NCBI GenBank assembly: GCA_002269645.1 | Contig: NIVC01000302.1 | Coordinates: forward strand, 130,303 to 194,302 | From: Macrostomum lignano | Taxonomy: Eukaryota | Direction of reading: 5' to 3' | Length of the DNA stretch: 64,000 bases | Shown: one piece after another, positions 24,826-56,078 of the stretch | Layout: each line of letters starts with the position of its first letter | Numbering within the stretch: position 1 is the stretch's first letter | The notes under the pieces: generated by a model | The model's input: the letters and a program-made list of their open reading frames with translations, nothing else | Told to the model about the DNA's origin: nothing | Databases searched by the model: none | Position numbers and translations under genes: made by a program

Positions 24826-25208
24826 GTGAGTTCTTAACGACGAAATTCCAAGTGCAGAGCTGTTAAGTTAAGCAGGGTTGATCGCGGTTAGTACGCGGAT
24901 TACTTAACTTTATGCTGTGATAGTTAAAGATGTCTTACTAGCCTGTAGCGTCTAGTTCTACTTCTTGCGGTTCATGCGGTTAAATTTTTCGATGCAAAAA
25001 TTAGACTTTCTCACGAATCTATTCGAGTCAAAAGGTTCTTTTTTCTAATGCGCTGGTTGACCCATTCTGTTGATTAGTTTTACCGATTTCACTCCGAAAA
25101 TTTTGCCTATGAGATCTACCTGGAGATGTAGGACTGGGAAAATCATATGGCTACCCCATCGCAATAGCTTTGGTGCCCTTGGAGAAGCGCTCTGGAAACG
25201 GCGCCAGT

Positions 25209-25752
25209 GGGATAGCGATGGCGCTCTTGGGGATAGCGATGGCGCTCTTGGGGATAGCGATAGCGCTCTTGGGGATAGCGATGGCGCTCTTGGGGATAGC
25301 GATGGCGCTCTTGGGGATAGCGATGGCGCTCTTGTGGACAGCGATGGTGCCATTGGTATATCGATGGCGCCCCTGGGATTGCGATGGCACCCCTGGGATA
25401 GTGATGGCGCCCTTGGTTTAGCGATGGCGTCCTTAGGATAGCGATGGCGCCCTTAGGATAGCGATGGCGCCCTTAGGATAGCGATGGCGCCCTTAGGATA
25501 GCGATGGCGCCCTTAGGATAGCGATGGCGCCCCTGGGATTGCGATGGCACCCCTGGGATAGTGATGGCGCCCTTGGTTTAGCGATGGTGCTCTTGGGGAT
25601 AGCGATAGCGCCCTTAGGATAGCGATGGCGCCCTTAGGATAGCGATGGCGCCCTTAGGATAGCGATGGCACCCCTGGGATAGCGATGGCACCCCTGGGAT
25701 AGCGATGGCGCCCCTGGGATAGCGATGGCGCCCCTGGGATAGCGATGGCATC
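25209..25752. repeat. 20-21 bp minisatellite (GGATAGCGATGGCGCCCTTA)n in NVL intron
   Basis: Direct tandem copies. Confidence 0.95.
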
Positions 25753-26050
25753 TCTGGTGCAGACACCTGTGGTCGACGTGCTGGTGAAATTTTGAGGCTT
25801 AGCAAGGCCGCACTGAGGCGCAGTGCTGATTGGTGCACGCTGCACAGGGGTGCATTGAGTACACTGGCGCTTTTGGGGAAAATTCGACCCTCTGGCAGAA
25901 TTGTTGAATATCTAGACGGTCCGAAGGGCTGGCGACTAAGCTGAGGGGAGATCCCCCCCCCCCTGGTTTGGTATTCCTACTGTGTTTTAAAGCTGATGAT
26001 TAAGCGGAAGAAATTAAAGAACAAATCTTTTTTTCTGCTGTTTTCCTCAG

Positions 26051-26413
26051 GACTACCGCAGCAGTCTCAACGAAGCCAGTCTGCGCAGAATTCGCGAAAC
26101 CGCAGCAGCCGCCTCCGGCAATCACGCCACGCCGACTTCGATAGCAACTACCGGCGATGAACACGACGATTTGGAGCCGGTGGACAACGGCGACGACATC
26201 GCGTCATCGTCGGCTACACCGCTGCCTCCTCCGTCGAAGCGTCGGCGTCGTCTGCGCAAATCCGACGAGCCAGCAGGAGCGGCGGCGGCGGTTGCGTCAG
26301 TTGAACGGAGAAGCCTGGCCACTCGGCTGGTGGACGAGATGGAGCTGGAATTTAGCGTGCCGCAGTTGAATTCGGAGGCGCTGTTCAAGGACCTGTTCCA
26401 CGAGGAGCTGATG
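26051..26413 (+). CDS. NVL: NVL exon (low-complexity linker with NLS-like PSKRRRR)
   Basis: TTTTCCTCAG acceptor, open frame DYRSSLNEASL...EELM, ending at a G|GCAAGT donor just before an in-frame stop. Confidence 0.7.
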
Positions 26414-26559
26414 GCAAGTTCTTAGCGCTGGGGCTGCGTCGATGATTGGGCGATTACTAATTATCAGACCTTCCCTAATCTTATCGGTTTAGATGTTAGA
26501 AATCTTCCTTAAGCTGCTCCAGTCTAGAAGTTAACCCTTACTATCCATAGAAATCTTCT

Positions 26560-26980
26560 ATCAATTATCCCCATGGAAATTCCCATAAAACTGCCTGTCA
26601 ATTGTCCCAACTGAAATCTCCAATCAATTGTCCCCATGGAAATCTCCCATCAATTGTCCCCATGGAAATCTCCAATCAATTGTCCCCATGGAAATCTCCC
26701 ATCAATTGTCCCCATGGAAATCTCCCATCAATTGTCCCCATGGAAATCTCCCTCATAAATATCCCATAAAAATCTCCCATCAATTATCCCCATGGAAAAT
26801 CTCCCCCATAAATATCCGCATGGAAATTTCCCATCAGTTATCCTCATGGGATTTTCCCATTAATTATCTCCATAGGAATCGCTCATTAATTATCCCAATG
26901 GAAATTTCCCATTTTTTCCCCATGGAAATCGCCCCATCAATTATCCCCATGGAAATATCCCATCAATTATCCCCACAGAA
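26560..26980. repeat. 26-bp minisatellite (ATTGTCCCCATGGAAATCTCCCATCA)n in NVL intron
   Basis: Tandem copies that decay toward the right. Confidence 0.9.
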
Positions 26981-27115
26981 ATCGCGCATCAGCTATAAAA
27001 TAGTCGCAGAAATGGTGCCTCAACCACCCCAAAAGGCCAGAATTAGTCTTCCAACAACTCTTCTTTTAAACACCTAGCTTAAGTTCACCTCCGCCACCTC
27101 ATTGCTCACCCGCAG

Positions 27116-27244
27116 GCCCTGTGTCGCGTAGCAGTGGCCGCCCTGTCCTGCCCGCCCTCGCTGGTCACCGAAGAGCTGCAGGGCTGCTTCGTGCTCGGCT
27201 CGCCAAAGAGCGGAAAAACCACTCTGGTTCGGGCCGTAGCCGCT
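27116..27244 (+). CDS. NVL: NVL exon, D1 Walker A
   Basis: CGCAG acceptor and GTAAGT donor; ALCRVAV...GCFVLGSPKSGKTTLVRAVAA. Confidence 0.8.
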
Positions 27245-27311
27245 GTAAGTCTTTCAAAAAATCGTCTTATGATTGTGTTTTCTATTGTGGCATAGATCTT
27301 CCATCAATTGC

Positions 27312-28340
27312 TAGCTTTATCTGAGCACTATTCCCCATTGATCACCAGTTTTATCTGAGCACTATTATTCCCCATTGATCACCAGTTTTATCTGAGCACT
27401 ATTCCCCATTGATCACCAGTTTTATCTGAGCACTATTCCCCATTGATCACCAGTTTTATCTGAGCACTATTCCTCATTGATCCCCAGCTTTATCTGAGCA
27501 CTATTCCCCATTGATCACCAGCTTTATCTGAGCACTATTCCCCATTGATCACCAGTTTTATCTGAGCACTATTCCCCATTGATCACCAGCTTTATCTGAG
27601 CACTATTCCCCATTGATCCCCAGCTTTATCTGAGCACTATTCCCCATTGATCCTCAGTTTTATCTGAGCACTATTCCCCATTGATCACCAGTTTTATCTG
27701 AGCACTATTCCTCATTGATCCCCAGCTTTATCTGAGCACTATTCCCCATTGATCACCAGCTTTATCTGAGCACTATTCTCCATTGATCCCCAGCTTTATC
27801 TGAGCACTATTCCCCATTGATCACCAGTTTTATCTGAGCACTATTCCCCATTGATCACCAGCTTTATCTGAGCACTATTCCCCATTGATCCCCAGCTTTA
27901 TCTGAGCACTATTCCCCATTGATCACCAGTTTTATCTGAGCACTATTTCCCATTGATCCCCAGCTTTATCTGAGCACTATTCCCCATTGATCACCAGCTT
28001 TATCTGAGCACTGTTCCCCATTGATCACCAGCTTTATCTGAGCACTATTCCCCATTGATCACCAGTTTTATCTGAGCACTATTCTCCATTGATCCCCAGC
28101 TTTATCTGAGCACTATTCCCCATTGATCCCCAGCTTTATCTGAGCACTATTCTCCATTGATCCCCAGTTTTATCTGAGCACTATTTCCCATTGATCCCCA
28201 GCTTTATCTGAGCACTATTCTCCATTGATCCCCAGCTTTATCTGAGCACTATTCCCCATTGATCCCCAGCTTTATCTGAGCACTATTCCCCATTGATCCC
28301 CAGCTTTATCTGAGCACTATTCCCCATTGATCCCCAGCTT
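27312..28340. repeat. 34-bp minisatellite (AGCTTTATCTGAGCACTATTCCCCATTGATCACC)n, about 30 copies, in NVL intron
   Basis: Highly homogeneous tandem copies. Confidence 0.97.
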
Positions 28341-28358
28341 CACTGAAATTTTAACCAG

Positions 28359-28953
28359 CTCTCAGGCATGCCCCTATGCGAGCTGCACCTAGACTGGTTC
28401 GCTGGCAAAACTGCCGAAGCCGCGGCAGCGATGTGGCAAGCTGTGCTGTCCAAAGCCACTGCCGCCCAGCCCTGCCTGCTGTTGCTGCACAGCGTCGACC
28501 GACTGTCCACCGTCTCCGAGGCCAACAAGCCTCTGGCCGCCTGCCGCCGAGCTCTGCTCAACTGTCTGCCCGAGTTCGTCGGCACCCGCGTATTGTTAAT
28601 TGGCGAGTCCAGCTCCGCCCTGACCGACATGGACGACGGTCTGTTGTGCGCCTTCCGCAAAGTTGTCCGCCTCGGCTTGTTGGATCGGCGCCAACGCGCC
28701 GCCTGTCTCAGTCAGCTGTTCGCTTCGGCCGGGGTCCGACTGCTGGACTGCAGCGGCTCCGATTTGTTGGAATCCTGCTCTCTGAGAACTGTTGGATTCA
28801 ATGTTGGCGATTTGAAACAGCTGGTCCGGGAGGCGGTGGAAGATGCGCACGTTTCCCTGCGACTGCCTCACAGCGGTGGCGGCGGCGTTGACGGCGAAGA
28901 TAGCGGCTACCAGCGGATCGCCAAGCTGATGCGAGACTTTGGCGATTCTCTTT
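28359..28953 (+). CDS. NVL: NVL exon, remainder of degenerate D1 AAA domain
   Basis: AACCAG acceptor in frame; QPCLLLLHSVD, RVLLIGES, GFNVGDLKQLVREA; GTGAGT donor at 28954. Confidence 0.8.
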
Positions 28954-28977
28954 GTGAGTCCATTGTGCTAAATTATA

Positions 28978-29650
28978 GGAGAGTAGAGGACGATTCTCCA
29001 ATGAGATTAGAGGGCAATTCTTCAGTGGGAGTAGATGTCGATTCTCCTATGAGATTAGAGGGCGATTCTCCAATGAGAGTAGAACGCGATTCATCAATTA
29101 GAGTAGAGGGCGATTCTTCAAAGAGAGTAGAGCGCGATTCTTCAAAGAGAGTAGAGGGCGATTCTTCAAAGAGAGTAGAGGGCGATTCTTCAAAGAGAGT
29201 AGAGCGCGATTCTTCAAAGAGAGTAGAGGGCGATTCTTCAAAGAGAGTAAAGGGCGATTCTTCAAAGAGAGTAGAGGTCGATTCATCAATGAGAGTAGAG
29301 GGCGATTCTTCAAAGAGAGTAGAGGGCGATTCTTCAAAGAGAATAGAGGGCGATTCTTCAAAGAGAGTAGAGGGCGATTCTTCAAAGAGAGCAGAGGGCG
29401 ATTCATCAATGAGAGTAGAGCGCGATTCTTCAAAGAGAGTAAAGGGCGATTCTCCAATGAAAACAGAGGTCGATTCATCAATGAGAGTAGAGGGCGATTC
29501 TTCAATGAGAGCAGAGGGCGATTCTCCAATGAGAGTAGAGGGCGATTCTTCAATGAGAGCAGAGGGAGATTCTCCAATGAGAGTAGAGGGCGATTCTTCA
29601 ATGAGAGCAGAGGGAGATTCTCCAATGAGAGTAAAGGGCGATTCTTCCAT
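28978..29650. repeat. 24-bp minisatellite (GAGAGTAGAGGGCGATTCTTCAAA-type)n in NVL intron
   Basis: Tandem copies; they produce the RVEGDSSK repeats in the ORF track. Confidence 0.95.
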
Positions 29651-29746
29651 TCGCGTGCTGAATATCGGGATAAAAGCCCCTTAAAAACCGAACCAGTCAC
29701 ACAAAGCCTATCAGAGCCGCCCCCACCCCTCCCTCGCCCTAACCAG

Positions 29747-30234
29747 CCGCTGCAGCCTCACCTGGCACCGAGCCAGCTGCTCTCGAATTAGACTCGGCTC
29801 GCCTCCAGTCTGCCTTCGATCGGGTGCTGCCGTTGGCCAAGCAGAAGCCGCACTTTGTTCGCATCCCGGACGTCAGCTGGGAGGATATTGGCGGCTGTTT
29901 CGAAGCTAAGCGCGAGATCCGCCAGACATTCATGTCGCTGGTGCTGGACCCAGAAGGCGCTGAGGCTATTGGCCAAAAAGCCGACGGTCTGCTACTAGTT
30001 GGCGAGCCCGGCTGTGGCAAAACTTTACTGGCCAAAGCGTTGAGCAACGAGGCCGGATTGAACTTTATGAGCGTGAAAGGGCCGGAGATATTCGATAAAT
30101 ATCTGGGCGAAAGCGAACGGGCGCTGCGCGTGCTGTTCGAGAATGCCAGAGCCTGTCAGCCCTGTCTAGTGTTCTTCGATGAGATCGACGCGGTTTGCGC
30201 CCATCGGGGCAGCGACACAGGGGCTCATTCTACG
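29747..30234 (+). CDS. NVL: NVL exon, D2 AAA domain N-terminal half
   Basis: IPDVSWEDIGG, GEPGCGKT, NEAGLNFMSVKGPE, VFFDEID; GTGAGT donor at 30235. An alternative in-frame acceptor lies 9 nt downstream. Confidence 0.9.
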
Positions 30235-30261
30235 GTGAGTTTTCTTAATTATGATTGGCTG

Positions 30262-30446
30262 GCAAGCAGCAAGGTAGGGAAAGATGGGGGTGGTCCAGGG
30301 CTGCTATTGGCTGGCGCAGTGAGCAAATGGATGGGTAGGAAAGATGGGGGTGGGCCAGGGTTGCTATTGGCTGGCGCAGTGAGCAAATGGATGGGTAGGA
30401 AAGATTGGGGTGGGCCAGGGTTGCTATTGGCTGGCGCAGTGAGCAA
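30262..30446. repeat. 60-bp unit repeated about 3 times in NVL intron
   Basis: Positions 30301-30360 and 30361-30420 are nearly identical. Confidence 0.9.
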
Positions 30447-30563
30447 AAGAAAAGACGATGTCGTCTTTAATTGGTGGAACGCCGAAAGCCACAAGGCTAA
30501 TTTAATTTCATCGTCGGGTTGATACAATAAACCTGCTTCAAGCTATCACCAAACAAACCTCAG

Positions 30564-31046
30564 GTGGTTAACCAGCTGCTGACTCTATTAGACGGGCTGG
30601 AGTGCCGCGGCCAGGTGTTCGTCATGGCGGCCACCAACCGGCCGGACTTGATTGACGCGGCCATCCGCCGGCCGGGCCGCCTGGGTAAGACTATCGTCGT
30701 GCGAAAGCCGCAGTCTTCCGCCGAACGTCTCGAAGTTCTAGCCGCGCTGACTCGAACTAAGCCGCCATTCGGCGACGGTGTCGACCGGATGTCTACGCTG
30801 GCTAGGATTGCCGACGATGGCAGGTGCCGGGGACTGAGCGGCGCCGAGCTCAGCCAGCTGGTTGAGGAGGCCAAGCTCAACGCCAGGCTGGCCGGTGGTA
30901 GGCGCTACGTGACTGACGAGGACTTCAATTTTGCGCTAGCGGCGCTGTCGGTAAAATTGGCCCAGGCGACGGCTAGTCGGCGACGACGACTGCAGCTGAA
31001 CGGCGAAGACGGGAATGCGGCAAATAGCGGCGCCGATGCGGATTGA
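30564..31046 (+). CDS. NVL: NVL last exon, D2 second region of homology and lid
   Basis: CTCAG acceptor; VVNQLLTLLDGLECRGQVFVMAATNRPDLIDAAIRRPGRL, TKPP and IADDGRC are NVL-type motifs. Confidence 0.92.
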   Translation: MVNQLLTLLDGLECRGQVFVMAATNRPDLIDAAIRRPGRLGKTIVVRKPQSSAERLEVLAALTRTKPPFGDGVDRMSTLARIADDGRCRGLSGAELSQLVEEAKLNARLAGGRRYVTDEDFNFALAALSVKLAQATASRRRRLQLNGEDGNAANSGADAD

Positions 31047-31147
31047 AATTGGATGCGATTATCGATCGATAACGGATTGCTCTTATAGCTAGATATTTTT
31101 GCGCGCGAATTCAACTTTGTGCAAAAATTGAGGGAGTTGATTTCACA

Positions 31148-31607
31148 GTTCAGAATTGGTTCCAGACCGAGTTCGGAATTGGTTCCAGAGTGAGTTTGGA
31201 ATTGGTTCCAGACCGATTTCGGAATTTGATTCAGAGTGACTTCGGAATTGGTTCCAGAGTGAGTTCGGAATTGGTTCCAGAGTGAGTTCGGAATTGGTTC
31301 CAGAGTGAGTTCGGAATTGGTTTCAGAGTGAGTTCAGAATTGGTTCCAGAGTGAGTTTGGAATTGGTTCCAGAGTGAGTTCGGAATTGGTTCCAGAGTGA
31401 GTTCGGAATTGGTTCCAGAGTGAGTTCGGAATTGGTTCCAGAGTGAGTTCGGAATTGGTTCCAGAGTGAGTTCGGAATTGGTTCCAGAGTGAGTTCGGAA
31501 TCAGTTCGAGTGAGTTCGGAATTGGTTCGAGTGAGTTCGGAATCAGTTCCAGAGTGAGTTCGGAATCAGTTCGAGTGAGTTCGGAATCAGTTCCAGAGTG
31601 AGTTCCA
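31148..31607. repeat. 23-bp minisatellite (GAGTGAGTTCGGAATTGGTTCCA)n
   Basis: Tandem copies downstream of the NVL stop. Confidence 0.95.
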
Positions 31608-32153
31608 TCCTCAAGCTTGGCCTAACTACTCGTACGTTTTCAAACTGTCGAAGTGTAGTATTTTGATGCTGAAAATAATTTAGGGAACTATTGAATATTT
31701 GTGTAGAATGGCTATTGTTAATAAACCTACTGAGCCATTTTAGCTACAGTGGTATGCCTTTTTGTGTGCTTTAATAAAAACCCAGCATTTATGCAATGCA
31801 ACAGTGTGCTGTACGCTGCAGTTGCTGGCTGGTTAGTTAAATTATTTTATAATAGAGTATTCTTATGTAAACCTGCTACCGTATTGTCTGGTTGAAACTA
31901 ATAGTTTATTTATAATTATGCATTTTCGTCTTCATCCTATTAGTGTGTACTCGTTGGAACCAGTTTTATTGTACAATAAATATATCCTTTGACCTGGTCT
32001 GATTGCGAACTGCGAGATTGCGACTGCTGATAGCACTGCGGGTGTAATCACTGGTTGGTTCCATTTTATCCTATTAGGCATTAGGATGAGATTTTATTCT
32101 ATTAGAGATATATGACAGCTTTGGATTTTGTCTAATTATGTATCTTAACCATT

Positions 32154-32815
32154 GGGGATCTTATCCCATTAGGGATCTTATCCCATTACGGATCTTATCC
32201 CATTAGGGATCTTATCCCATTACGGATCTTATCCCATTAAGGATCTTATCCCATTAGGGATCTTATCCCATTAGGGATCTTATCCCATTAGGGATGTCAT
32301 CCCATTAGGGATCTTATCCCATTAAGGATCTTATCCCATTAGGGATCTCATCCCATTAGAGATCTTATCCCATTAGGGATCTTATCCCATTAGGGATCTT
32401 ATTCCATTAGGGATCTTATCCCATTAGGGATCTTATCCCATTAAGGATCTTATCCCATTAAGGATCTTATCCCATTAGGGATCTCATCCCATTAGGGATC
32501 TTATCCCATTAGGGATCTTATCCCATTAAGGATCTTATCCCATTAAGGATCTTATCCCATTAGGGATCTTATCCCACTAGGGATCTTATCCCATTAGGGA
32601 TCTTATCTGATTAGGGATCTTATCCCATTAGGGATCTTATCCCATTAAGGATCTTATCCCATTAAGGATCTTATCCCATTAGGGAAGGGATCTTATCCCA
32701 TTAGGGATCTTATCTCATTAGGGATCTTATCCCATTAGGGATCTTATCTCATTAGGGCTTATCCCATTAGGGATCTTATCCTATTAGGGATCTTATCTCA
32801 TTAGGGATTTTGTCC
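32154..32815. repeat. 17-bp minisatellite (GGGATCTTATCCCATTA)n
   Basis: Tandem copies, each with an internal inverted repeat GGGAT-CTT-ATCCC. Confidence 0.95.
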
Positions 32816-32948
32816 TGCTGGGTAATTTTAGGGATTTTATCCTATTTGATTTTTTGTTTGGGTTTGTATGTCGCTATGAATATTTTGTATTAGTATATTA
32901 ATAATATAAAAATCGCGCTTATTCCAGCCCAGAAATTCGAACCCGGAC

Positions 32949-33140
32949 ATGTCAGTCACTCAGACCATCGCTAAGCGCATCATGAGCCTGGTTGGCCTGT
33001 GCCGACTGGCCTTCTACTACGGCTACATCCCGCTAGTCATGGTGCTGGGCTACATGCAAGGCTCTGAGCCCGGCCATCCGCCAGTCACTCTGCTCAGCAT
33101 CATCAGCCCCATCAGCGATGCCGCCCCGCCGCCTATGTAG
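32949..33140 (+). CDS. TOMM7: Mitochondrial import receptor subunit TOM7
   Basis: 63 aa; AFYYGYIPLVMVLGYMQGSEPGHPPVTLLSII matches the Tom7 TM/GFIP..LG..G..PG.P motif. An acceptor TTATTCCAG lies about 20 nt upstream. Confidence 0.88.
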   Translation: MSVTQTIAKRIMSLVGLCRLAFYYGYIPLVMVLGYMQGSEPGHPPVTLLSIISPISDAAPPPM

Positions 33141-34089
33141 CTTCTCAACTCTTTAATTAATAATTAATTTGCATTACCTAGAAAATCTGATTCAACTACT
33201 GATAGCAGTAGTGAGTTCGCGCATCCGCTTTATTATTTTTTAATTGTCTAAAAAAAGCTTCGTATTCCATCTTATTGGCAATTTTGTTAGTAAGCTACTG
33301 TATAAATATTACTGGTTTCTTCTATCCTGTTACTGTTGTGTCTTGATTGAACTTGTGGAAGTAGGATCAGTGACAGAGTGAATCAATAAAATAGCGTGAA
33401 GAGAAAAATGGCAGTTATGTCGCGGCCCAGTCCGATGACCCTATCTGAGCTATTCGATTTTAAAAAATTATTTACTTTACCTGTTTTGCATGGCAGCACT
33501 CGATATTTTATGCTACTGTTTACCGACCCTTAATTAGCAATGGCGGAAACTCTGCCCATTCCGCAGACTCCTGAGCACACAGGCGCCAATACTGTACTCA
33601 GGCACGTTGTCTGGAATCCCATTGTCGATTGACTATTAAGTTGCATCATAAATTTGAGTGAGTGCATAGAGAGGGGGGTTAAGGGGGCGAAATAGTAACA
33701 TTAAGAATTTTTATCAAAATGCTGCGCTTATCAAAATAATTGACTATGTAAGAGGGCCCCCTCTCTCTCTGGTATGAATCTCGATCGGATAAGGTCTAGG
33801 TAGACAAATTAACTTAATTTTTAGGGCTGGCTGTGCACGGAAGGGGGTGTCAGACAGAGAGGCGCGGCTAAGGGTAGAAAATATTTTATGGCAGACGCAG
33901 AAGGGCTTGGGGGAGGTGGGTCTAGGGAACGATCGATAATTGATGGCTGTGAATTGTGAAATGTACAGTAAGCGAGACGGCCTGAAAAAGTTCATTAAAT
34001 TTCACGATAGTATACTGTCTACTTTATCTATTGGTCCTCAGTTCTTATCTTACAATCCTGCACGCATAAGTGTGCAGGAATGAAATCTT

Positions 34090-34305
34090 GCACGCGTGGT
34101 CAATCGACAATGGACGTCGGACTGGAAAGTCGGGGGTTCGATTCCCGATCCTACTGGAACAATTTGTGCCCTTGAGCGAGACAATTAACTCTGCATTGCT
34201 TCAGTTCACCCAGCTGTAAAATGGGTGCCAGCATTAGCTGGGGTAATTGAGGGTGTGACGACCCTCCAGTCCTGCCCAGGTGTAATCAGTTAATAATAAT
34301 AATAA
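34090..34305 (+). mobile_element. tRNA-derived CORE-type SINE
   Basis: B box GGTTCGATTCCC at 34135; CORE-like TGTGCCCTTGAGC..TTAACTCTG..CTTCAGTT..CAGCTGTAAAATGGG; (TAA)n tail; homologous to 55900-56050. Confidence 0.75.
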
Positions 34306-34355
34306 TTCTCTAAAAAGGTGCAAAGAAAATTCACGTATAAATTTGTAAACTCCAG

Positions 34356-34823
34356 GGCGTCACTGTTGTGGCTTTCATTGAGTCCGGCTCAGCCGGTGAG
34401 CAGCCGTTGTCAAGCGGCCCAGCTCTGTCCGGACAGCAACTAATCGAGGATCTGTCTGGCCGTCTAGAACGCCTAGGCGCTGAGCGCGAGTCCGGACAGT
34501 TCAGTCTGGACATGGAGGTGTACACGCCTGTACAGCAGCAGCAGCAACAGCAGCAGCCGGCCTCCCAGCAGCAGCCGCAGCCGCGCACTCTTCACGTTGT
34601 GGCCTCATCGGAGGCGCCGGTGTCGTCCTATATTTTGCCGTCGGGATCTTCAATTGAAGCCGCGGCCGGCCCGCTAGTCAGCGCCGACTCCATGTTCGGC
34701 CTGCTGCTTGGCCAGCTGCGCGCCCTGTACCAGGCCAAGCCCGGCCAGGCTGTGCACTGCCGGGGTCCGAAATACCGGCTGGCCGATTTCACTGTCCGGC
34801 TGGCCACGGCCGTGTTCGGACAG
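34356..34823 (+). CDS. MED20: Mediator subunit 20, exon A (begins GVTV, no genomic ATG)
   Basis: CTCCAG acceptor; GVTVV, LERLGAERESGQFSLDMEVY, RGPKYRLADFTVRL; CAG|GCGAGT donor. Confidence 0.85.
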
Positions 34824-34912
34824 GCGAGTGGCTCTATTAGATTGCGTTTAATTATAATGTGTTCTCCCTGATCTTCTGATGCATGCAGCTTGGATAGCCT
34901 CTGGTTCTCCAT

Positions 34913-35472
34913 TTAGAATCATCCCTTAATCTAGAATCACCCCTTAGTCTAGCAGCTGCATCTAGAATCGCCCTCTAATCCAACAGCTGCATCTAGAATC
35001 GCCCTCTAATCCAACAGCTGCATCTAGAATCGCCCTCTAATCCAGCAACAGCTGCATCTAGCTGCCCTCTAATCCAACAGCTGCATCTAGAATCGCCCTC
35101 TAATCCAGCAACAGCTGCATCTAGCTGCCCTCTAATCCAACAGCTGCATCAAGAATCGCCCTCTAATCCAACAGCTGCATCAAGAATCGCCCTCTAATCC
35201 AACAACAGCTGCATCAAGAATCGCCCTCTAATCCAACAACAGCTGCATCAAGAATCGCCCTCTAATCCAACAACAGCTGCATCTAGAATCGCCCTCTAAT
35301 CCAACAGCTGCATCTAGAATCGCCCTCTAATCCAACAGCTGCATCTAGAATCGCCCTCTAATCCAACAGCTGCATCTAGAATCGCCCTCTAATCCAACAG
35401 CTGCATCTAGAATCGCCCTCTAATCCAACAGCTGCATCTAGAATCGCCCTCTAATCTAACAGCTGCATCTAG
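34913..35472. repeat. 31-bp minisatellite (CTAGAATCGCCCTCTAATCCAACAGCTGCAT)n in MED20 intron
   Basis: Tandem copies. Confidence 0.95.
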
Positions 35473-35583
35473 AGTCTCCTCCAGTGCCCCTATCTGGGAT
35501 CGCTCTCAGATCCCTCACAACAAAGTTGCTATCCAACATGATTGCACAACCGGCAACATGCTGTTAACCACCAACCTCTGCAG

Positions 35584-35961
35584 TCGAACAGCGTCAAAGG
35601 CGTATTTGTCGAAGCGGAGTACCGGCCCTGCAACCGGCTGCAATTCGGCTGGCCATTGTTGAAAGAGTTTTTCAGCGGAGTTTTCCCCGACCGCGCCTTC
35701 GCTGTTGAACATCCGAACGAAGCTCTGCAGGCTCACCTGCAGGCCCAGGCCGCTACCGGACCGATCGACTACACCTATCCCGTCACTGTACAGCAATACC
35801 TGCTGCTCGCCTATCAGCTGGGCTCTTCCAGACAGCAGATGAGATCAGCTGTTGCGCCATCCTCCGCAGCCGATGCTGCAGTGCCCGTCTCCATGCAGCA
35901 GCAGCAGTCCTGGGGCCGCGCCCCCCTGCCTGGACCGCCAAGTCAGCTAATTGGACGCTGA
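35584..35961 (+). CDS. MED20: Mediator subunit 20, last exon
   Basis: CTCTGCAG acceptor in phase 0; VKGVFVEAEYRPC...WPLLKEFF...YTYPVTVQQYL. Confidence 0.85.
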   Translation, partial: SNSVKGVFVEAEYRPCNRLQFGWPLLKEFFSGVFPDRAFAVEHPNEALQAHLQAQAATGPIDYTYPVTVQQYLLLAYQLGSSRQQMRSAVAPSSAADAAVPVSMQQQQSWGRAPLPGPPSQLIGR

Positions 35962-39291: not shown

Positions 39292-39433
39292 CATTTTCTG
39301 GTCCGACCGGGCGTAGCTTGGTTGGGTGTTAAACCAGTGGGGCGTGGCTCTTGTGCGTTGGTGCGGGGGGTGGTGGGCCGGGCCTTGGTCACGTGCCCGC
39401 GGCCTGGGTGGCGGTTTTTTAATGCGGTGCGGG

Positions 39434-40851
39434 TAAATGACAACTATACGAAGAAGCTGAGCCCCAGGTTTGAGTCCGTCAAGAAGGTTGCAGCCTCTAT
39501 CGGCAAGGGCTGGTTCATGGCAAAGCTTGACTTGTCGCAAGCTTACAGAAGCGTGGCGATCCATCCGGATGATTACCAGGCGACCGGCATTGGTTGGCGT
39601 TTTAAAGGCAACCGTGATCTGACATGGCTTGTCGACACCCGGCTACCCTTTGGTAGCTGCGCCTCGGTCGAGATTTTCTACCGGCTTACTCAAGCGGTCA
39701 AGAGGATGATGGTGCGACGCGGCGTGGCCAATATTTCGGTTTACCTGGATGATTTTCTGGTTGCAGCCGAGAGCGAGAAAGAGTGTATGGATGCTCTGAA
39801 AGAGCTGATTAAGCTGGTTCGCCAGTTAGGTTTTGGTGTCAATTGGAATAAAGTGGTTGAACCTACGCAATGCTTGGTGTATCTCGGTGTGAAGATTGAT
39901 ACTGTCCGTGGAGTTCTTAGTGTGCCGGCGGAAAAGTGTGAGGAAATGCGCACCACACTGCTTAACTTTTCGCAGCGCAGGCGTCTCTCGAAACGACAGC
40001 TTTCGTCGCTTTGTGGCAAGCTCAGCTGGGTCGTCCAGGTGGTGCACGCTGGGAGTTGCTTCCTAAGACCCCTGTTCGACCTGCTTAATGCCCTGGAAAA
40101 GCCACATCACAAAGTGCGTGTGTCCGCTGACACTGTGCGTATTTTACTCTGGTGGCGAGGTGCCCTTCTGAAGCTGCCTGATTTTCAGCTTTGGAGAAGT
40201 TGCACAAACGGCTGGATCATCGAAACCGATGCGAGCAGTGCTGGTGGCGGAGCCATTTTGCGCAATGGTAGCGGTATGGTGGATTGGCTGTACGTCAATT
40301 GGGATCTGGATGCTGGAGGAAAGTTTAAAGACAAGCATATCACGTACAAAGAAGCTATTGTTCCGCTGCTGGCTATGGTTCGCTGGGGTGCCTTTTTAAA
40401 TGACAGTTCGGTCGTGGTCTACTCCGACTCTAGTGCGGCTGTTGGCATGATTAACAGAGGTTGCTGTCGGCGGCCTGAGTTGCAGCCGCTGTTCCAGACT
40501 GCCATGCTCATTGCTGTTAGGCGTGGGGTTGAGGTGCGCGCTTTTCATGTGCCTGGCTGGTACCATGTCTTTGCGGACCCGTGCTCTAGGCTGCACGCCG
40601 TGGACAAAATGCGCGATTTTTTATTTCGGGTGTATGGCTCTGTTGACTGCTGTTTTAACGAGATCGCTAGCCATGCTTTCTGCCCTGCTGCCTCCGTTTT
40701 TCTCATTTTACAGGCCCTCCGCGCCAGACTCCCGACCGCCTCAGCAAGCGTTGCGCATTTATCCTGGGCAATGCCTACGCGCCCCGCACGAAGCGGAGTT
40801 ACCGGTCGCAGCTCGCGTCTTGGCTGCGATTTTGCAATTCCCGGCACCTGA
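39434..40851 (+). CDS. DIRS-type reverse transcriptase/RNase H (N-terminally truncated)
   Basis: KLDLSQAYR, RLPFG, YLDDF, YLGVKID, ETDAS, KEAI, SDSS, ADPCSR. Confidence 0.9.
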
Positions 40852-41714
40852 CGCCGCTGCGGGCAGAGCCTGTGCACGTGGCTGAATACCTGGCTGAGCT
40901 GTCCACCCGGCTGTCAGCCTTTCGGAGTTGCCAGGCGTATGCTAACGCGGTCTCGCTGTACTTCAGAGCTCTCGGCCGGCCGGACCCGTGCGAGTCGCCG
41001 ATGGTTAAGCTGGTGCTTCGTGGTCTTCGCCGGTGTCTCAGTCGGCAGCAGCGCTCAAGGGAGCCATTCAGAGTCGCGGATCTCCTCAAGCTACACGCCC
41101 ACCTGGACCAACGTCTGAAGAGTGACATCGCGTTCTGGGCAGCAGTTCTGGCAGCCTGGTGGGGTATGCTGCGAAAAGCGAATGTGACGACGCAATCGGG
41201 GCAGCTCGATCTGTGGTGCGACCTGGCAGCATCGAGCATCGTCTTTTCAGAGTACGACTGTGAGCTCACTGTGCGGCATTCGAAGACCAACCAGTTTGGC
41301 GATCGAGTTCAGCGAGTGTTTCTTCCGAAACTGCCTGATGGAAGCTTGTGTGTCCTGTGTCCGTTCCGTGCGCTCGAGCGGCAGCTACGGACAAACCGAA
41401 TCGGCCAGGCGCCGCGTCCGGTTCACCTGTTCTCCACGTGGTCGTCCGCGGGATGGTTGCCTCTGACGGCTAGCAGGTTTGATAGCCGGCTTCGTTCGCT
41501 CTGCACATCGGCGGGTTTGTCGCCACGCGAGTTCACTGGCCACGGGCTGCGGCGGGGCGGCGCTACGGCAGCCATGCAGCTCGGTGTTCCACTGCCGATG
41601 ATCAAGAAGCTGGGCGACTGGAAGGGCAACTCAGTGTTTCGCTATCTATCTGTTCGGGACTCGGATGCCAGGGCGGCTGTGCATGGCTTGGCTCGTCGGG
41701 TTGGCGCGCTCTAA
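40714..41714 (+). CDS. Tyrosine recombinase of the DIRS element
   Basis: Open frame with AYAPRTKRSY N-domain and catalytic set LRKAN, SKTNQ, HGLRRGGAT, GDW, RY. Confidence 0.9.
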
Positions 41715-42283
41715 CTCTCTCTCTCTCTCTCTCTATGTCGAACTTTCTGGTTTGGGTTGGGCCAGGCTCGAACCTGCGCCTCTCGTGCCAACTGCCTTGA
41801 CTTCGTCTCACTGGTTTAATGGTCCGACCGGGCGTAGCTTGGTTGGGTGTTAAACCAGTGGGGCGTGGCTCTTGTGCGTTGGTGCGGGGGTGGTGGGCCG
41901 GGCCTTGGTCACGTGCCCGCGGCCTGGGTGGCGGTTTTTTAATGCGGTGCGGGCTGTCGCTGACCCGCCAAGCGCGTATTGATTTTTTTTCTCGCTTTTA
42001 AGTCTCCAAGGTTTTTATTTGGCTTTTAGTCCGGTAAATTAAAGTTAATAAATACGCTCGAATACTCGTACAATAGGGCCAGGCTCGAACCTGCGCCTCT
42101 CGTGCCAACTGCCTTGACTTCGTCTCACTGGTTTAATCGGCTGAAAATGATAGGTTTAAATAGTAATTACATGTAGAATGTGCAATGTAATTCATTCAAA
42201 AAACCACAAATTTTGTGTGAGTAAACCCTACATCTCCATCAACTATACAGCCTTGTGTGAGTAAACCCTACATCTCCATCAAC

Positions 42284-42850
42284 TGAACCATACTGAACCA
42301 TACTGAACCATACTGAACCATGCTGAACCATATTGAACCATACTGAACCATACTGAACCATATTGAACCATACTGAACCATACTGAACCATACTGAACCA
42401 TACTGAACCATATTGAACCATACTGAACCATATTGAACCATACTGAACCATACTGAACCATACTGAACCATACTGAACCATACTGAACCATACTGAACCA
42501 TATTGAACCATACTGAACCATACTGAACCATACTGAACCATACTGAACCATGCTGAACCATACTGAACCATACTGAACCATACTGAACCATATTGAACCA
42601 TACTGAACCATACTGAATCATACTGAACCATGCTGAACCATACTGAACCATACTGAACCATGCTGAACCATATTGAACCATACTGAACCATACTGAACCA
42701 TACTGAACCATGCTGAACCATATTGAACCATACTGAACCATACTGAACCATATTGAACCATACTGAACCATACTGAACCATATTGAACCATGCTGAACCA
42801 TATTGAACCATATTGAACCATTCTGAACCATATTGAACCATGCTGAACCA
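42284..42850. repeat. 10-bp satellite (ACTGAACCAT)n
   Basis: Tandem copies. Confidence 0.97.
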
Positions 42851-43435
42851 TAAAAGTCTCAAACTGACAATATTATGTTTGTCACAGAAAATCATATTTC
42901 TTGAAACAGTAAATTGCAATGCCAGAAAATCGGTTAAGATTCTATCTTTGAAACTGCATAGCTAAGAGCTTCATCTGGTGGATTCTGATAAATTTCGTGA
43001 GTCACAAAAAGATTAACACGGCTTGTCTGAGTTCACTTTAAGCTAATCAATAAATTCAGTCGATAGTCAGAATTCTGGGACACTATAATCAGAAGGGGCA
43101 GAGTTCGAGACTGGGCTCACATTATGTACAAGAAAATTTGTAAGCAATGGACCAAGAACCAGTTGGGGTCAGTCACAATTTTCGGCAGATGCTTCTATTG
43201 AAAACATGCGAATTGAAAAGCAACACTGTGCTGCAGCGGGAGCAAGGCAAAGCGCGGGACGGTGCAGGAGAGGCTGCTTGTGTACCGATTAGAAAGCTGG
43301 CGATGCGCTCAGCATCCTGCTCCAAGTAGCTAAGGCAGTAAAACTGGCTGATTTTGATGCGCATGCAGTTTTAAAAACCTTTGCAGGTGTTTACAAAATC
43401 GAAATATCAAATGGTCGATAGGGAGAGCTTTGGTC
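42851..43435. repeat. Unclassified dispersed repeat Y, copy 1 (truncated)
   Basis: Near identical to about 49104-49688. Confidence 0.9.
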
Positions 43436-43571
43436 TGGACGTGAAGTGAAGCCAACTCAATTTTACAAGGCTACATAATTATATGCACTCAAACTGAACT
43501 AACTGACAATGCCAGTTATCATTTCATTCATCCATTAATGCGTATGACACTTCTTTTTGGAAAAAAAGGGA

Positions 43572-46500
43572 TGTCGCAGACAGACCGAATTAAGTTGTCT
43601 ATGACCTTAGCTTTATGTCTTTATAAGCTAAATATACGAGAGCTGCAGATACGAACTAAGCGCAGCACAGACGGCTATGCCGTAATCTAACATTCATACC
43701 CAAAACATAACATGGTGTCAGAGGAAACCGTAAAAGTGCAACTTCAATTCGAGCTCCACTAAAGCATACATATGGCTGATTCTGGAAGCCTAAAGCCGCC
43801 TGCACCATTTTCCTTTGATGAAAACAAAGCCGAGAAATGGCGAAAGTGGATCAACGGTTTCAAACTATTCCTCACGGCGACTAAGAGAGAAAAAGAGGCC
43901 GACGAGGTCAAGACAGCAATTCTCCTCACGGCATTGGGTGAACAAGGTCGAGATATTTACGATACGCTAGATTTGACTGAAGGTAATTCATTCGACCAAA
44001 TTGTTGCCGCATTTGAGAAATTCTGCAAGCCGCTGGACTGTGAAACATTCGAAAGATACAAGTTCAGAATGCGCACACAGCAGCAATTCGAAGAATTCGA
44101 TCACTATCTTGGCGAGCTGCGAACACTCATAAAACAATGCAATTTTGCAAAGCCAATGGCATCCGAAACAATCGAAAATGCAATTCTAAGAGACCAAATC
44201 GTGTATGGAGTGCACAATCCTTCGGTCAGGGAGAGGCTATTGGAACAGGACAAGCTGACGCTCGAGAAGGCAATCGCATTGTGTCGAGCATGTGAAGCAT
44301 CCAAAGTGCAAGCACAGAAAATGATCGGTAAGGCGTATGAAAACCCAAGACCAAGTGTGGACACAGTTAAAAAAATGGCACCCACAGCAAAGCACCAGAG
44401 AAACCGAGTAAGAAACTCCTCCCAAGGCTCCCGCAAGGACTCGCATCAGGGCAGAACCAGTTGCAGATACTGCGGAAAACAGCACACCTTTGGTAGTAAG
44501 CACTGTCCTGCATTTGGAAAGATGTGTAGTAATTGTGGAAGAAAGAACCATTTTAAAGCCATGTGTCAGCAAAAGTTTCGAAATAACCCTACAAGACATG
44601 TCAGACTGGTAGATGAACATGATGACGAAAATGACGAAGACACAGGAGGCAGCTTAACAAAATCATGGGCTGTATCTTCAGTTGCTAGCTCTGACCAGAT
44701 GGCTGGAAATAATGAAAATAAGACCGCTCGCACGAACAGCAAGACAATCGCGAGTGTACTGGTTGAGGATCGTCAGTTGATTTCGTTTAAAATCGACACA
44801 GGAGCCGATGTTAACATTATGTCTGCAAAAAGACTTAGGCAGATTACCAAGAAGGAATACCGAGAGGATAGAAGCACACAGTTAGTTGTGTACAACAAAC
44901 AGAGGCTGACAGTTTTGGGACAAATTCAACTGCTTCTCAGACACCAGAATGAAGAAATTCAAGCAAAATTCTTTGTCATTGCTGAAGATAATATGCCATT
45001 GCTTGAGACAAATACAGCAGAGAGTCTCGGACTGATACGGATACTGCATGCTGTTCAACAGGATGTACCGGTATCGGAAGAACCACTTACAAAGGAAGTG
45101 ATTTTGAAAGAATACGCCGATGTCTTTGAAGGGCTAGGTTGTCTGCCAGGAACACACCACATAGTTTTACAGACGAACGCTGTTCCCAGAGTTCAGGGTC
45201 CAAGAAAAGTTCCGTTTGCAGCATTGAAAGCATTAAGAGATGAGCTGCATCGCCTCAGTGAGCAAGGAATGATTTCCCAGTGTTCGCACCCCACGGAGTG
45301 GGTATCCAACGTTGTGGTTGTGTGGAAGCCTGACAGTTCTGTGCGTCTCTGTCTCGATCCGCAAAGTCTAAACGAGTTCATCATTCGAGACCGGTACCCA
45401 ATTCCATCATATAATGAAATTATTAGCAAGATGACTGGCGCAAAGTTTTTTTCAACTTTTGATGCTACAGCAGGATTTCATCAAGTAGCTTTAGATCATG
45501 AAAGCTCTCTTCTAACCGCATTTCATACACCTTTCGGAGTCTACAGGTGGAACAGACTGCCATTCGGATTGAAGGATGCTCCAGAGGCATATCAGAGAAA
45601 AATCAGAGAAGAGATCACGAGTCATGTTGCAAACTCCGCAAACTATATTGACGATATAATCGTGTGGGGCAGAACAAGGAAAGAGCATGATGACTCGGTG
45701 AGGCAACTGCTACAGCAGTGCAAGGATAAGAATTTAAAGCTAAACAAGACCAAAGCTAAAATCGGACAGCGAGAGTTGAAATTCCTAGGACATATTCTAA
45801 CCAGCGAAGGAGTCAAGATCGATCCGGAAAAGATACGAAGCATCAAAGACATGCCGCATCCGAACAGTTACTCCCAGATATCTGAAAAAGCCGCGCAACT
45901 ACAAAGATTCATCGGCAGCGCAAACTTCTTGTCGAAGTTCATACCAAATTTCTCAGCGCTTGCTTCACCTTTGCGACAGTTACTGAAAAAAGATGTAGCG
46001 TGGAACTGGGGAAAACGGCAGGAAGAAGCATATGAAGCAATTAAGGAATCACTGTGCAAAGCTCCACTATTGGGACAATTTAACCCAGATCAGAGTGTCA
46101 TTCTAAGTGTAGATGCCAGTAAAGATGGACTCGGAGCCGCTTTGATGCAAGACGGACACGTCATTGAATACGCATCGTCATCGATGACTCCTGCTCAAAA
46201 GAAATATGCTCAAATCGAAAAATAATTCTTGGCAATAGTCTTTGGATGTCACAGATTTCGACAATACTTATGGGGTCGGCACGTACAGGTTGAATCAGAT
46301 CACAAGCCCCTGCAATTCATTATGAAAAAGCCACTGAGTGAACTATCAGCTCGACTGCAGCGACTAGCTTTGAAAATTCAAGAATTCGATCTCAATGTGA
46401 CGTATGTACCCGGAAAAGAACTATACCTTGCGGATACACTAAGCCGCGCTTATCTGAAATCCGTACATTCATCCAATGATATTGATGATGACATTCAGTG

Positions 46501-48103: not shown

Positions 48104-48257
48104 CATTTTCTCGGCTGAAAATGATAGGTTTAAATAGTAATTACATGTAGAATGTGCAATGTAATTCATTCAAAAAACCACAAATTTTGTGTGAGTAAAC
48201 CCTACATCTCCATCAACTATACAGCCTTGTGTGAGTAAACCCTACATCTCCATCAAC

Positions 48258-48935
48258 TGAACCATACTGAACCATACTGAACCATACTGAACCATGCTGA
48301 ACCATATTGAACCATACTGAACCATACTGAACCATATTGAACCATACTGAACCATACTGAACCATACTGAACCATACTGAACCATATTGAACCATACTGA
48401 ACCATATTGAACCATACTGAACCATACTGAACCATACTGAACCATACTGAACCATACTGAACCATATTGAACCATACTGAACCATACTGAACCATACTGA
48501 ACCATACTGAACCATGCTGAACCATACTGAACCATACTGAACCATACTGAACCATATTGAACCATACTGAACCATACTGAATCATACTGAACCATGCTGA
48601 ACCATACTGAACCATACTGAACCATGCTGAACCATATTGAACCATACTGAACCATACTGAACCATGCTGAACCATACTGAACCATACTGAACCATGCTGA
48701 ACCATATTGAACCATGCTGAATCATACTGAACCATGCTGAACCATACTGAACCATACTGAATCATACTGAACCATATTGAACCATACTGAACCATACTGA
48801 ACCATATTGAACCATGCTGAACCATATTGAACCATATTGAACCATTCTGAACCATATTGAACCATGCTGAACCATATTGAACCATATTGAACCATACTGA
48901 ACCATATTGAACCATGCTGAACCATATTGAACCAT
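48258..48935. repeat. 10-bp satellite (ACTGAACCAT)n, second array
   Basis: Tandem copies, same left flank as the first array. Confidence 0.97.
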
Positions 48936-48973
48936 GCTGCCCCCAAATATTGCAGGCTCAACAAAAAGCGCGG

Positions 48974-55631: not shown

Positions 55632-56078
55632 TAACAACAACAACAAAATACGCTGTCAGGATGGCAAAAGTCAGCGTCACAGGGCGCGCTTCATGGCTTG
55701 GGCGCGAACAAAGGCCGCGCCACCGGCAGTGTCCGGGGCGCCGGCGCTAGCTAGTAGACAGTCGACATAACGCCGAGTTCGCGCTTGACCTCGCCGGTAG
55801 GGTGCCTGCAGCGTGAGCAGCAGCACCTCCTGCATCGGCTGTGGGCAGTACGACTCGGCGCGGATGAGATGGCCTGCGAGCTGGAGTCGCCGACGGCGCA
55901 GTAGATCACGCCACACGCCCTCAATTACCCCAGCTAATGCTGGCACCCATTTTTTACAGCTGGATGAACTGAAGCAATGCAGAGTTAAGTGGTCTTGTTC
56001 AAGGACACAAATTGCTCCGAGTGGGTCGAGAATCGAACCCCCGACGCTCTAATCACTACTAGGCTACTGCAACCCCCT
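55632..56078 (-). mobile_element. CORE-SINE head joined to the 3' coding end of a LINE
   Basis: tRNA-like head with B box (56030-56039) and CORE shared with 34090-34305. Then RRRRLQLAGHLIR...RRGQAR..YVD (LINE RT C-terminus-like) and a (TTG)n tail. Confidence 0.7.

What the first reader, a model, noticed from the sequence alone, without database searches (positions are those of the whole stretch)
34340..34370. MED20 start codon may be supplied in trans by the spliced leader
Seen: the acceptor CTCCAG is followed directly by GGC GTC ACT GTT (G-V-T-V), and I find no ATG|GT mini-exon in 33140-34355. Known: MED20 proteins begin MGVT, and flatworm spliced leaders end in a conserved AUG that can act as initiator. 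Inference: SL-AUG spliced at 34355 yields exactly M-G-V-T-V, making translation of this Mediator subunit dependent on trans-splicing. This depends on the organism being a flatworm.
Basis: partly seen in the sequence, partly recalled or inferred. Interest (0 to 1): 0.72.

Follow-up and report, generated by a model that had tools for sequence, protein, structure and literature searches.

The report
MED20 start codon donated by spliced leader
In the flatworm Macrostomum lignano the Mediator subunit MED20 gene has no start codon of its own, and its first exon begins at a splice acceptor, so the ATG almost certainly comes from the trans-spliced leader, a mechanism already known in flatworms.

Summary
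The window is Macrostomum lignano scaffold NIVC01000302.1. A two-exon MED20 gene (Pfam Med20, E=2e-26) has its first exon starting at 34356 with GGC GTC ACT GTT, directly after CTCCAG. An in-frame TAA lies 18 nt upstream with no ATG in between. There is no ATG|GT anywhere in the 1.2 kb back to the upstream Tom7 gene. The five ATG|GC sites there do not resemble donors.

Full-length MED20 homologues start M-G-V, and the Gly is invariant, so exactly one Met codon is missing. The published M. lignano spliced leader is 35 nt, ends in ATG and is followed by a GTAAG donor. The published trans-acceptor motif [T/C]TNCAG fits CTCCAG. GenBank annotates this gene and two near-identical paralogs as 5'-partial. 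In both paralogs the model starts exactly at this acceptor.

SL joined to the exon reads ...GCATG|GGC and gives MGVTVV. The next AUG in any frame is 159 nt downstream and would remove strand β1 and helix α1.

No SL-junction read could be inspected. The use of the SL AUG as initiator is well known in flatworms (Cheng et al. 2006) and has been noted for Macrostomum. This is therefore an ordinary new example of a known mechanism.

The parts
34350..34355 (+). 3' splice acceptor CTCCAG, proposed SL trans-splice site (junction 34355|34356)
   Evidence: Sequence. It fits the M. lignano trans-acceptor motif [T/C]TNCAG (PMC8629364). The paralog gene models start exactly after it. It is one of three motif matches in 33400-34420 and the only one that gives a long ORF from the SL AUG.
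34356..34823 (+). MED20 exon 1, codons 2-157 (GVTVVAFIES...AVFGQ); it has no start codon of its own
   Evidence: Translation; Pfam Med20; PDB MED20; identical to GenBank PAA85846.1 'partial'.
34338..34340 (+). In-frame TAA that closes the MED20 frame 18 nt upstream of the exon, with no ATG between it and the exon
34512..34514 (+). First genomic ATG of the mature mRNA (in frame, Met54 when the SL Met is residue 1); the only alternative initiator
   Evidence: the ATGs in SL+CDS lie at nt 33 (the SL ATG) and then nt 192. In the AlphaFold model it lies inside strand 43-58, so starting there removes β1 (residues 2-9) and helix 26-39.
34824..35583 (+). Single cis intron, GC-AG type (CAG|GCGAGT ... 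CTCTGCAG|TCG), holding a 31-nt tandem repeat of about 17 copies at 34929-35473
   Evidence: The frame is kept only with this donor/acceptor pair. It reproduces the GenBank protein. Tandem repeat.
35584..35961 (+). MED20 exon 2 coding part, with stop TGA at 35959-35961
33141..34349 (+). Tom7-MED20 spacer, the presumed outron. It holds the Tom7 3'UTR with AATAAA at 33385-33390 and a dispersed repeat at 34129-34257. It has no ATG|GT.
32929..33140 (+). Tom7 (TOMM7) coding exon of the upstream same-strand gene, a probable operon partner
   Evidence: Pfam Tom7 on the called genes. Translation. In the paralog locus the locus tags are Mlig029932g2 (Tom7) and Mlig029932g3 (MED20).

Best explanation
The MED20 pre-mRNA of Macrostomum lignano is probably made either as the downstream part of a Tom7-MED20 polycistron or from a promoter in the spacer. 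It is SL trans-spliced at the acceptor CTCCAG| (34355/34356). The 35-nt spliced leader ends in ...UUGCAUG, so the mature mRNA reads ...GCAUG|GGC GUC ACU GUU. The leader's terminal AUG is the first AUG on the mRNA. It has G at -3 and G at +4, and it initiates translation to give M-G-V-T-V-V..., the N-terminus conserved across MED20 proteins. Full-length MED20 therefore depends on trans-splicing. Shown here: the gene structure, the absence of a genomic start codon, the conserved N-terminus, the SL sequence (from the literature), and an annotated 5' end at the acceptor. Inferred: that the SL is actually joined at this site, and that ribosomes start at its AUG.
For: The exon starts directly after an AG, with an in-frame TAA 18 nt upstream and no ATG in between. 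There is no ATG|GT in the 1215 nt back to the Tom7 stop codon. The five ATG|GC sites read GCAGT, GCAGC, GCGGA, GCAGA and GCTGT. None fits the G[T/C][A/G]AG shape of this genome's donors, whereas the gene's own GC donor is GCGAG. The Gly is invariant and lies directly after the Met in 20 of 20 other full-length MED20s, and MGV starts dominate the homologue set. The SL is published as a 35-mer ending in ATG, followed by GTAAG in the SL RNA gene, and 30-39% of M. lignano genes are trans-spliced with enrichment among conserved genes (PMC8629364; PMC5730564). CTCCAG fits the published trans-acceptor motif, and of three motif matches in the spacer only this one opens a long ORF. The three GenBank models (PAA85846.1, PAA77064.1, PAA85865.1) are all '5' partial'. 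The two paralog models start exactly at GGC after the AG, while neighbouring genes in the same loci (AAA, Neur_chan, RT, orf95) start with genomic ATGs. That annotation pipeline (TBONE) sets 5' ends from mapped SL-containing reads. Tom7 and MED20 carry consecutive tags of one transcriptional unit, Mlig029932g2 and g3. In SL+CDS the SL AUG is the first AUG, and the next AUG in any frame is 159 nt downstream. The AlphaFold model (pLDDT 77, pTM 0.73) places residues 2-9 in a confident β-strand. SL-AUG initiation is experimentally established in flatworms (Cheng et al. 2006, via PMC9851317, PMC3510090 and PMC7653826) and is noted for Macrostomum.
Against: I saw no RNA read, cDNA or peptide spanning the SL|GGC junction. 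A junction search in metagenome contigs found nothing, which was expected, and no supplementary table that I could read lists this gene. The GenBank model for this particular copy starts 3 nt further in, at GTC (34359) rather than GGC, so its annotated 5' end is not exactly at the acceptor. The polypyrimidine tract before the acceptor is poor. The paralogs are 95-99% identical even in the spacer, so they are not independent evolutionary evidence. Orthologues from other flatworms could not be retrieved.
Confidence: 0.87

Rival explanations
1. A small upstream cis exon ending in ...ATG is spliced to the 34355 acceptor and provides a genome-encoded start codon. Candidates are the ATG|GC at 33408-33412 or one of the other four ATG|GC sites.
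For: This gene does use one GC-AG intron (CAG|GCGAGT at 34823/34824), so GC donors work in this genome. Four of the five ATG|GC sites are kept in the paralogs. Sharing of acceptors between cis- and trans-splicing is reported in parasitic flatworms (PMC12582326).
Against: There is no ATG|GT at all in 33141-34355. The ATG|GC sites read TG|GCAGT, GCAGC, GCGGA, GCAGA and GCTGT. They lack both the AG| exon end and the GC[A/G]AG core that functional GC donors need. The site at 33408 lies about 18 nt after the Tom7 AATAAA, at that gene's expected cleavage site. None of the three transcriptome-guided gene models contains such an exon, and all are left 5'-partial at the acceptor.
Confidence: 0.04
2. 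Translation starts at the first genomic in-frame ATG (34512-34514) and gives an N-terminally truncated MED20. The open frame upstream of it would be untranslated, or the copies would be decaying duplicates.
For: It is the only genomic ATG available and it is in frame. M. lignano carries many recent duplicates, with three copies of this gene.
Against: The 52 codons before it are open in all three copies and are homologous to the MED20 N-terminus. HMMER alignments to human and mouse MED20 begin at residue 16, and GVTV matches residues 2-5 of the family. The truncation would remove strand β1, helix 26-39 and part of strand 43-58 of a confidently predicted fold. On an SL-bearing mRNA the SL AUG comes first and has G at -3 and G at +4.
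Confidence: 0.04
3. The 34355 acceptor is used mainly in cis from donors of the upstream AAA-ATPase or Tom7 genes. This would make read-through fusion transcripts, and MED20 would be translated as part of a fusion.
For: In this copy GenBank already models an AAA-Tom7 fusion, a 701-aa product with AAA and Tom7 domains, so read-through cis-splicing between neighbouring genes does occur at this locus.
Against: No model joins anything to MED20 in any of the three loci. The Tom7 exon ends in a stop codon followed by a poly(A) signal. A fusion would bury the MED20 N-terminus, which in the model forms an edge strand.
Confidence: 0.03

Closest known systems
[quoted passage not shown]
   Same: The SL ends in AUG. 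The recipient exon begins in frame directly after the acceptor. There is no genomic AUG that could give the conserved N-terminus. In Schistosoma more than 40 cDNAs need the SL AUG, and in Echinococcus 4 of 8 tabulated cDNAs need it to match conserved orthologue N-termini.
   Different: The species here is the free-living, early-branching macrostomorphan M. lignano, and the gene is MED20. I found no paper naming MED20 as such a case. Here the SL supplies exactly the one missing codion-length unit, a single Met codon, with no added residues. No experimental proof exists for this gene.
M. lignano SL trans-splicing and operons (Wudarski et al. 2017, PMC5730564; Ustyantsev & Berezikov 2021, PMC8629364)
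   Same: One 35-nt SL, the acceptor motif [T/C]TNCAG, enrichment among conserved genes, and same-strand neighbours processed from one transcriptional unit. Tom7 and MED20 carry the tags Mlig029932g2 and g3.
   Different: Those papers do not discuss the SL ATG as a start codon for particular genes. The Tom7-MED20 spacer is about 1.2 kb from stop codon to acceptor, longer than the ~100-bp mode. It contains repeats, and in one paralog a 1.27-kb transposon.
MED20 / TRFP subunit of the Mediator head module (Pfam PF08612; PDB 7EMF chain T, 6W1S chain O)
   Same: Med20 domain with E=2e-26, about 35% identity to vertebrate MED20, a conserved G-V-T N-terminus, and a predicted α/β fold with β1 at residues 2-9.
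   Different: It carries a poly-Q/P insertion (residues ~58-75) and a long Q/A/P-rich C-terminal tail. It has three near-identical copies in the genome and no genomic start codon.

Membership tests
SL-AUG-initiated flatworm mRNA (Cheng et al. 2006 class) | The organism's SL exon ends in AUG immediately before the GU donor | tested here: met
   The published M. lignano SL is CGGTCTCTTACTGCGAAGACTCAATTTATTGCATG, followed by GTAAG in the 109-nt SL RNA gene (PMC8629364). The final ATG is also noted for three Macrostomum species (PMC10468722). The SL gene itself is not in the window.
SL-AUG-initiated flatworm mRNA (Cheng et al. 2006 class) | The mRNA is actually trans-spliced to the SL at the acceptor in front of the ORF | not testable with these tools
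   No reads or cDNAs were available. Indirect support: the 5' ends of the paralog gene models lie exactly at CTCCAG|; the annotation pipeline sets 5' ends from SL reads; the acceptor fits the published motif; and Tom7 and MED20 carry tags of the same transcriptional unit.
SL-AUG-initiated flatworm mRNA (Cheng et al. 2006 class) | The SL AUG is in frame with the main ORF, with no intervening stop | tested here: met
   SL+exon translates as MGVTVVAFIES... continuously through the 282-codon ORF.
SL-AUG-initiated flatworm mRNA (Cheng et al. 2006 class) | No genomic AUG can give the phylogenetically conserved N-terminus | tested here: met
   TAA lies 18 nt upstream with no ATG between it and the exon, and no ATG|GT exists in the spacer. 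The Gly is invariant right after the Met in 20 homologues. The next ATG is 159 nt downstream.
SL-AUG-initiated flatworm mRNA (Cheng et al. 2006 class) | Ribosomes initiate at the SL AUG in vivo | not testable with these tools
   This needs ribosome profiling, N-terminal proteomics or a reporter assay.
MED20 (Pfam PF08612) | Significant match to the Med20 profile and to solved MED20 chains | tested here: met
   93.2 bits against a cut-off of 25. PDB 6W1S_O, 8T1I_O and 7EMF_T give E~1e-17.
SL-resolved operon (polycistron) | A same-strand upstream gene, a shared primary transcript, and a trans-spliced downstream gene | tested here: inconclusive
   Tom7 ends at 33140 on the same strand, with AATAAA at 33385-33390. 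The locus tags g2 and g3 share one transcriptional-unit prefix. The spacer is about 950 nt after the poly(A) signal, near the 1-kb repeat-adjusted threshold of PMC8629364. No RNA evidence was seen here.

The most novel reading that the evidence does not exclude
MED20 may have lost its genomic start codon early in flatworm evolution. If so, a core Mediator head subunit would have depended on SL trans-splicing across the whole phylum, from Macrostomorpha to Neodermata. A second reading concerns the neighbouring Tom7 gene. One copy has the acceptor CAG| and the paralogs have a genomic ATG| at the very same position. This could be a snapshot of interconversion between an SL-donated and a genome-encoded start codon.
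Probability: 0.2. Interest if true: 0.45.

Novelty: new member of a known kind. Interest (0 to 1): 0.22.

Why it matters
It explains why GenBank lists M. lignano MED20 and its paralogs as 'partial'. The models are in fact complete once the leader's ATG is added, and genome annotation in trans-splicing flatworms should add it. It also gives a clean case in a free-living, genetically tractable flatworm in which an essential, conserved transcription factor subunit cannot be made at full length without trans-splicing. M. lignano has transgenesis, so this could serve as a reporter for SL-AUG initiation. It does not change what is known about the mechanism.

Tried and rejected
- **Flatworm orthologues.** The profile search with A1 returned only 4 proteins, because the 8000-candidate limit was reached. 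The best non-Macrostomum homologue, P0004, lies on a 900-nt Logan contig with an ordinary 5'UTR (...aaatcaaaaaATGGGCGTT) and no SL. Named relatives were an ascidian, nematodes, arthropods and a sponge, not flatworms.
- **Direct junction evidence.** The exact protein starting with M is not in the 15-billion-protein collection. The junction 26-mer is absent from metagenome contigs.
- **Supplementary tables.** The supplements of PMC8629364, PMC5730564 and PMC5816591 either are not held or do not list Mlig029932, Mlig005043 or MED20.
- **Cheng et al. 2006.** The paper is not held, so I cite it only through papers that describe it.
- **SL gene and other RNAs in the window.** The SL sequence is absent at up to 3 mismatches. 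There are no Rfam matches and no tRNAs, so the tRNA-like stretch at ~34100-34160 is part of a dispersed repeat rather than a gene.
- **Paralog comparison of the spacer.** The copies are 95-99% identical, so conservation cannot tell functional from neutral sequence.
- **U12-type or AT-AC mini-exon.** Rejected, because no ATG is followed by AT and the acceptor is AG.

Full report
**What is in the sequence.** At 34350-34355 the + strand reads CTCCAG, followed from 34356 by GGC GTC ACT GTT GTG GCT TTC ATT GAG. Reading that frame backwards gives cag, ctc, aaa, tgt, att and then TAA at 34338-34340. The frame is therefore closed 18 nt upstream and contains no ATG before GGC. The ORF runs to a GC donor (CAG|GCGAGT, 34823/34824) and resumes after CTCTGCAG| at 35584. 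It ends with TGA at 35959-35961, which gives 281 codons without a start. The product is MED20. Pfam PF08612 scores 93 bits with E=2e-26, and mouse and human MED20 chains from Mediator structures give E~1e-17.

**Which organism.** The protein is 100% identical to GenBank PAA85846.1, 'hypothetical protein BOX15_Mlig029932g1, partial [Macrostomum lignano]'. The window maps to scaffold NIVC01000302.1 of assembly GCA_002269645.1.

**Only a Met codon is missing.** A search of 1.84 billion representative proteins returned 105 hits at E≤0.001, 104 of them other than this gene's own protein. Among the 107 proteins held at that point, which include the three M. lignano copies, the starts were MGVT (14), MGVA (8), MGVS (4), MGVV (3) and MGVK (3). 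In an alignment of 21 full-length sequences, the first residue of the M. lignano ORF (Gly) is invariant and the Val is nearly so. In the other 20 sequences the Gly lies directly after the initiator Met. The exon therefore starts at codon 2 of the family.

**No genomic source for the Met.** Between the stop of the upstream Tom7 gene (33138-33140) and the acceptor there are 15 ATGs, and none is followed by GT.
- Five are followed by GC, at 33408, 33490, 33540, 33888 and 33943. They read TG|GCAGT, GCAGC, GCGGA, GCAGA and GCTGT.
- The published M. lignano donor motif is GT[G/A]AG, and this gene's own GC donor is AG|GCGAG. None of the five resembles either.
- None of the three transcriptome-guided GenBank models contains an upstream exon.

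**The spliced leader.** M. lignano has one 35-nt SL, CGGTCTCTTACTGCGAAGACTCAATTTATTGCATG. In the 109-nt SL RNA gene it is followed directly by GTAAG (PMC8629364). The top motif at its trans-splice acceptors is [T/C]TNCAG, which CTCCAG fits. In 33400-34420 that motif occurs three times. SL-AUG reading from the other two (34204 and 34269) stops after 5 and 8 codons, and only 34355 opens the MED20 ORF. SL+exon reads ...TTGCATG|GGCGTC and translates as MGVTVVAFIES.... The SL AUG is the first AUG of the mRNA and has G at -3 and G at +4. The next AUG in any frame is 159 nt downstream, at 34512-34514, and is in frame.

**Indirect evidence that the site is used.**
- The Mlig_3_7 annotation was built by mapping SL-containing reads after trimming. 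'Transcriptional units' were then cut at those peaks (the TBONE pipeline; PMC5730564).
- Three near-identical MED20 copies exist: this one, L002 (Mlig005043g2) and L003 (Mlig029932g3). They are 99% identical as proteins, and all are labelled 5'-partial.
- In L002 and L003 the gene model starts exactly at GGC after CTCCAG. In this copy it starts 3 nt later, at GTC.
- Neighbouring genes in the same loci (AAA ATPase, a Neur_chan gene, an RT, a 95-aa ORF) start with ordinary genomic ATGs. A 5'-partial model at an AG is therefore not a general artefact of the annotation.
- In L003, Tom7 is Mlig029932g2 and MED20 is Mlig029932g3, consecutive genes of one unit. This fits a Tom7-MED20 polycistron resolved by trans-splicing.

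**Why the alternative start is unlikely.** An AlphaFold model built on the 21-sequence alignment (mean pLDDT 77, pTM 0.73) puts residues 2-9 in a β-strand, with mean pLDDT 85 over the first ten residues. A helix follows at 26-39 and a strand at 43-58. Starting at the ATG at 34512 would remove the first two elements and cut the third. The region upstream of that ATG aligns to human and mouse MED20 from residue 16 on.

**Comparison with what is known.** Papers held here describe Cheng et al. 2006 as showing that the flatworm SL 3'-AUG can serve as initiator Met. They report that more than 40 Schistosoma cDNAs need it (PMC9851317). Echinococcus cDNAs need it to match conserved orthologue N-termini, and that use is conserved within Neodermata (PMC3510090). 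All flatworm SLs end in ATG (PMC12582326; PMC7653826). For Macrostomum, PMC10468722 calls the SL's final ATG a 'translation start codon' and mentions the annotation problems it causes. This gene is a clear member of that class by every feature that sequence can test. The two features that need RNA or protein data, actual SL joining and initiation at the SL AUG, could not be tested.

**Verdict.** I rate it a new member of a known kind, with low interest. Its practical value is that the 'partial' GenBank models are probably complete once the leader's ATG is added. The gene would also make a neat reporter for SL-AUG initiation in a flatworm that can be made transgenic.

**What did not work.**
- Orthologues from other flatworms could not be retrieved.
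- No junction read, cDNA or protein starting with M was found.
- Supplementary tables did not list the gene.
- The original 2006 paper is not held.
- The paralogs are too similar to serve as independent evolutionary evidence.

Noticed in passing
window 32910-32940 versus L002 7280-7310 and L003 8575-8605: The Tom7 exon in the window copy is preceded by the acceptor ttattccag|CCCAGAAATTCG. An SL ATG there would be in frame and would add MPRNSNPD before the canonical MSVT start. GenBank fuses the AAA ATPase and Tom7 in this copy. In both paralogs the same spot reads ttcATG|CTCAGAAATTCG: there is no AG, but a genomic ATG sits exactly where the SL ATG would be, and Tom7 is annotated separately as a 5'-partial 70-aa protein. 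This could be coincidence, cross-mapping of SL reads between copies, or a switch between an SL-donated and a genome-encoded ATG.
   Followed up: partly
L002 about 7770-9040 (insertion at window-equivalent 33415/33416): A 1.27-kb element with terminal inverted repeats (CGAGGGGAAGTCAAAAAGTAATGATAATTTT...) and a TA target duplication, looking like Tc1/mariner, sits in the Tom7-MED20 spacer of one paralog only.
   Followed up: partly
window 34824-35583: The only MED20 intron is GC-AG (CAG|GCGAGT). It carries a 31-nt tandem repeat of about 17 copies (34929-35473) whose copy number differs between paralogs, with gene lengths of 1606, 1781 and 1671 nt.
   Followed up: partly
window 1-24000: A strongly strand-skewed, pyrimidine-rich stretch (GC skew about -0.5, AT skew about -0.3). 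It has a large tandem periodicity of about 3.36 kb, seen as repeated ORF starts at 5841, 9200, 12560 and 15919, and internal TCTCCTC arrays. The ORFs have no Pfam match.
   Followed up: no
window 25200-32808: The region of the upstream AAA-ATPase gene, probably its introns, is packed with minisatellites of periods 17, 20, 23, 24, 26, 34 and 60. The 438-aa ORF at 28368-29684 matches Pfam Gp5_trimer_C and Fibrinogen_BP only because a 24-nt repeat translates to an 8-residue repeat, so the match is an artefact.
   Followed up: partly
window 39322-41714: ORFs with a reverse transcriptase domain and a weak tyrosine-recombinase (Phage_integrase) domain in a 58% GC block, resembling a DIRS-like retroelement.
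   Followed up: no
window 42282-48939: A Ty3/gypsy-type pol (817-aa RT ORF at 43772-46225, then an RNaseH/integrase ORF at 46229-47869). It is flanked on both sides by arrays of the 10-mer ACTGAACCAT (57 and 68 copies), probably inside its LTRs.
   Followed up: no
window 34129-34257 and 55914-56045 (minus strand): A dispersed repeat (89% identity over 133 nt) lies in the MED20 outron. The stretch just before it contains a tRNA-like T-arm (GGTTCGATTCC), but ARAGORN and Rfam find no tRNA. It is probably a tRNA-derived SINE.
   Followed up: partly
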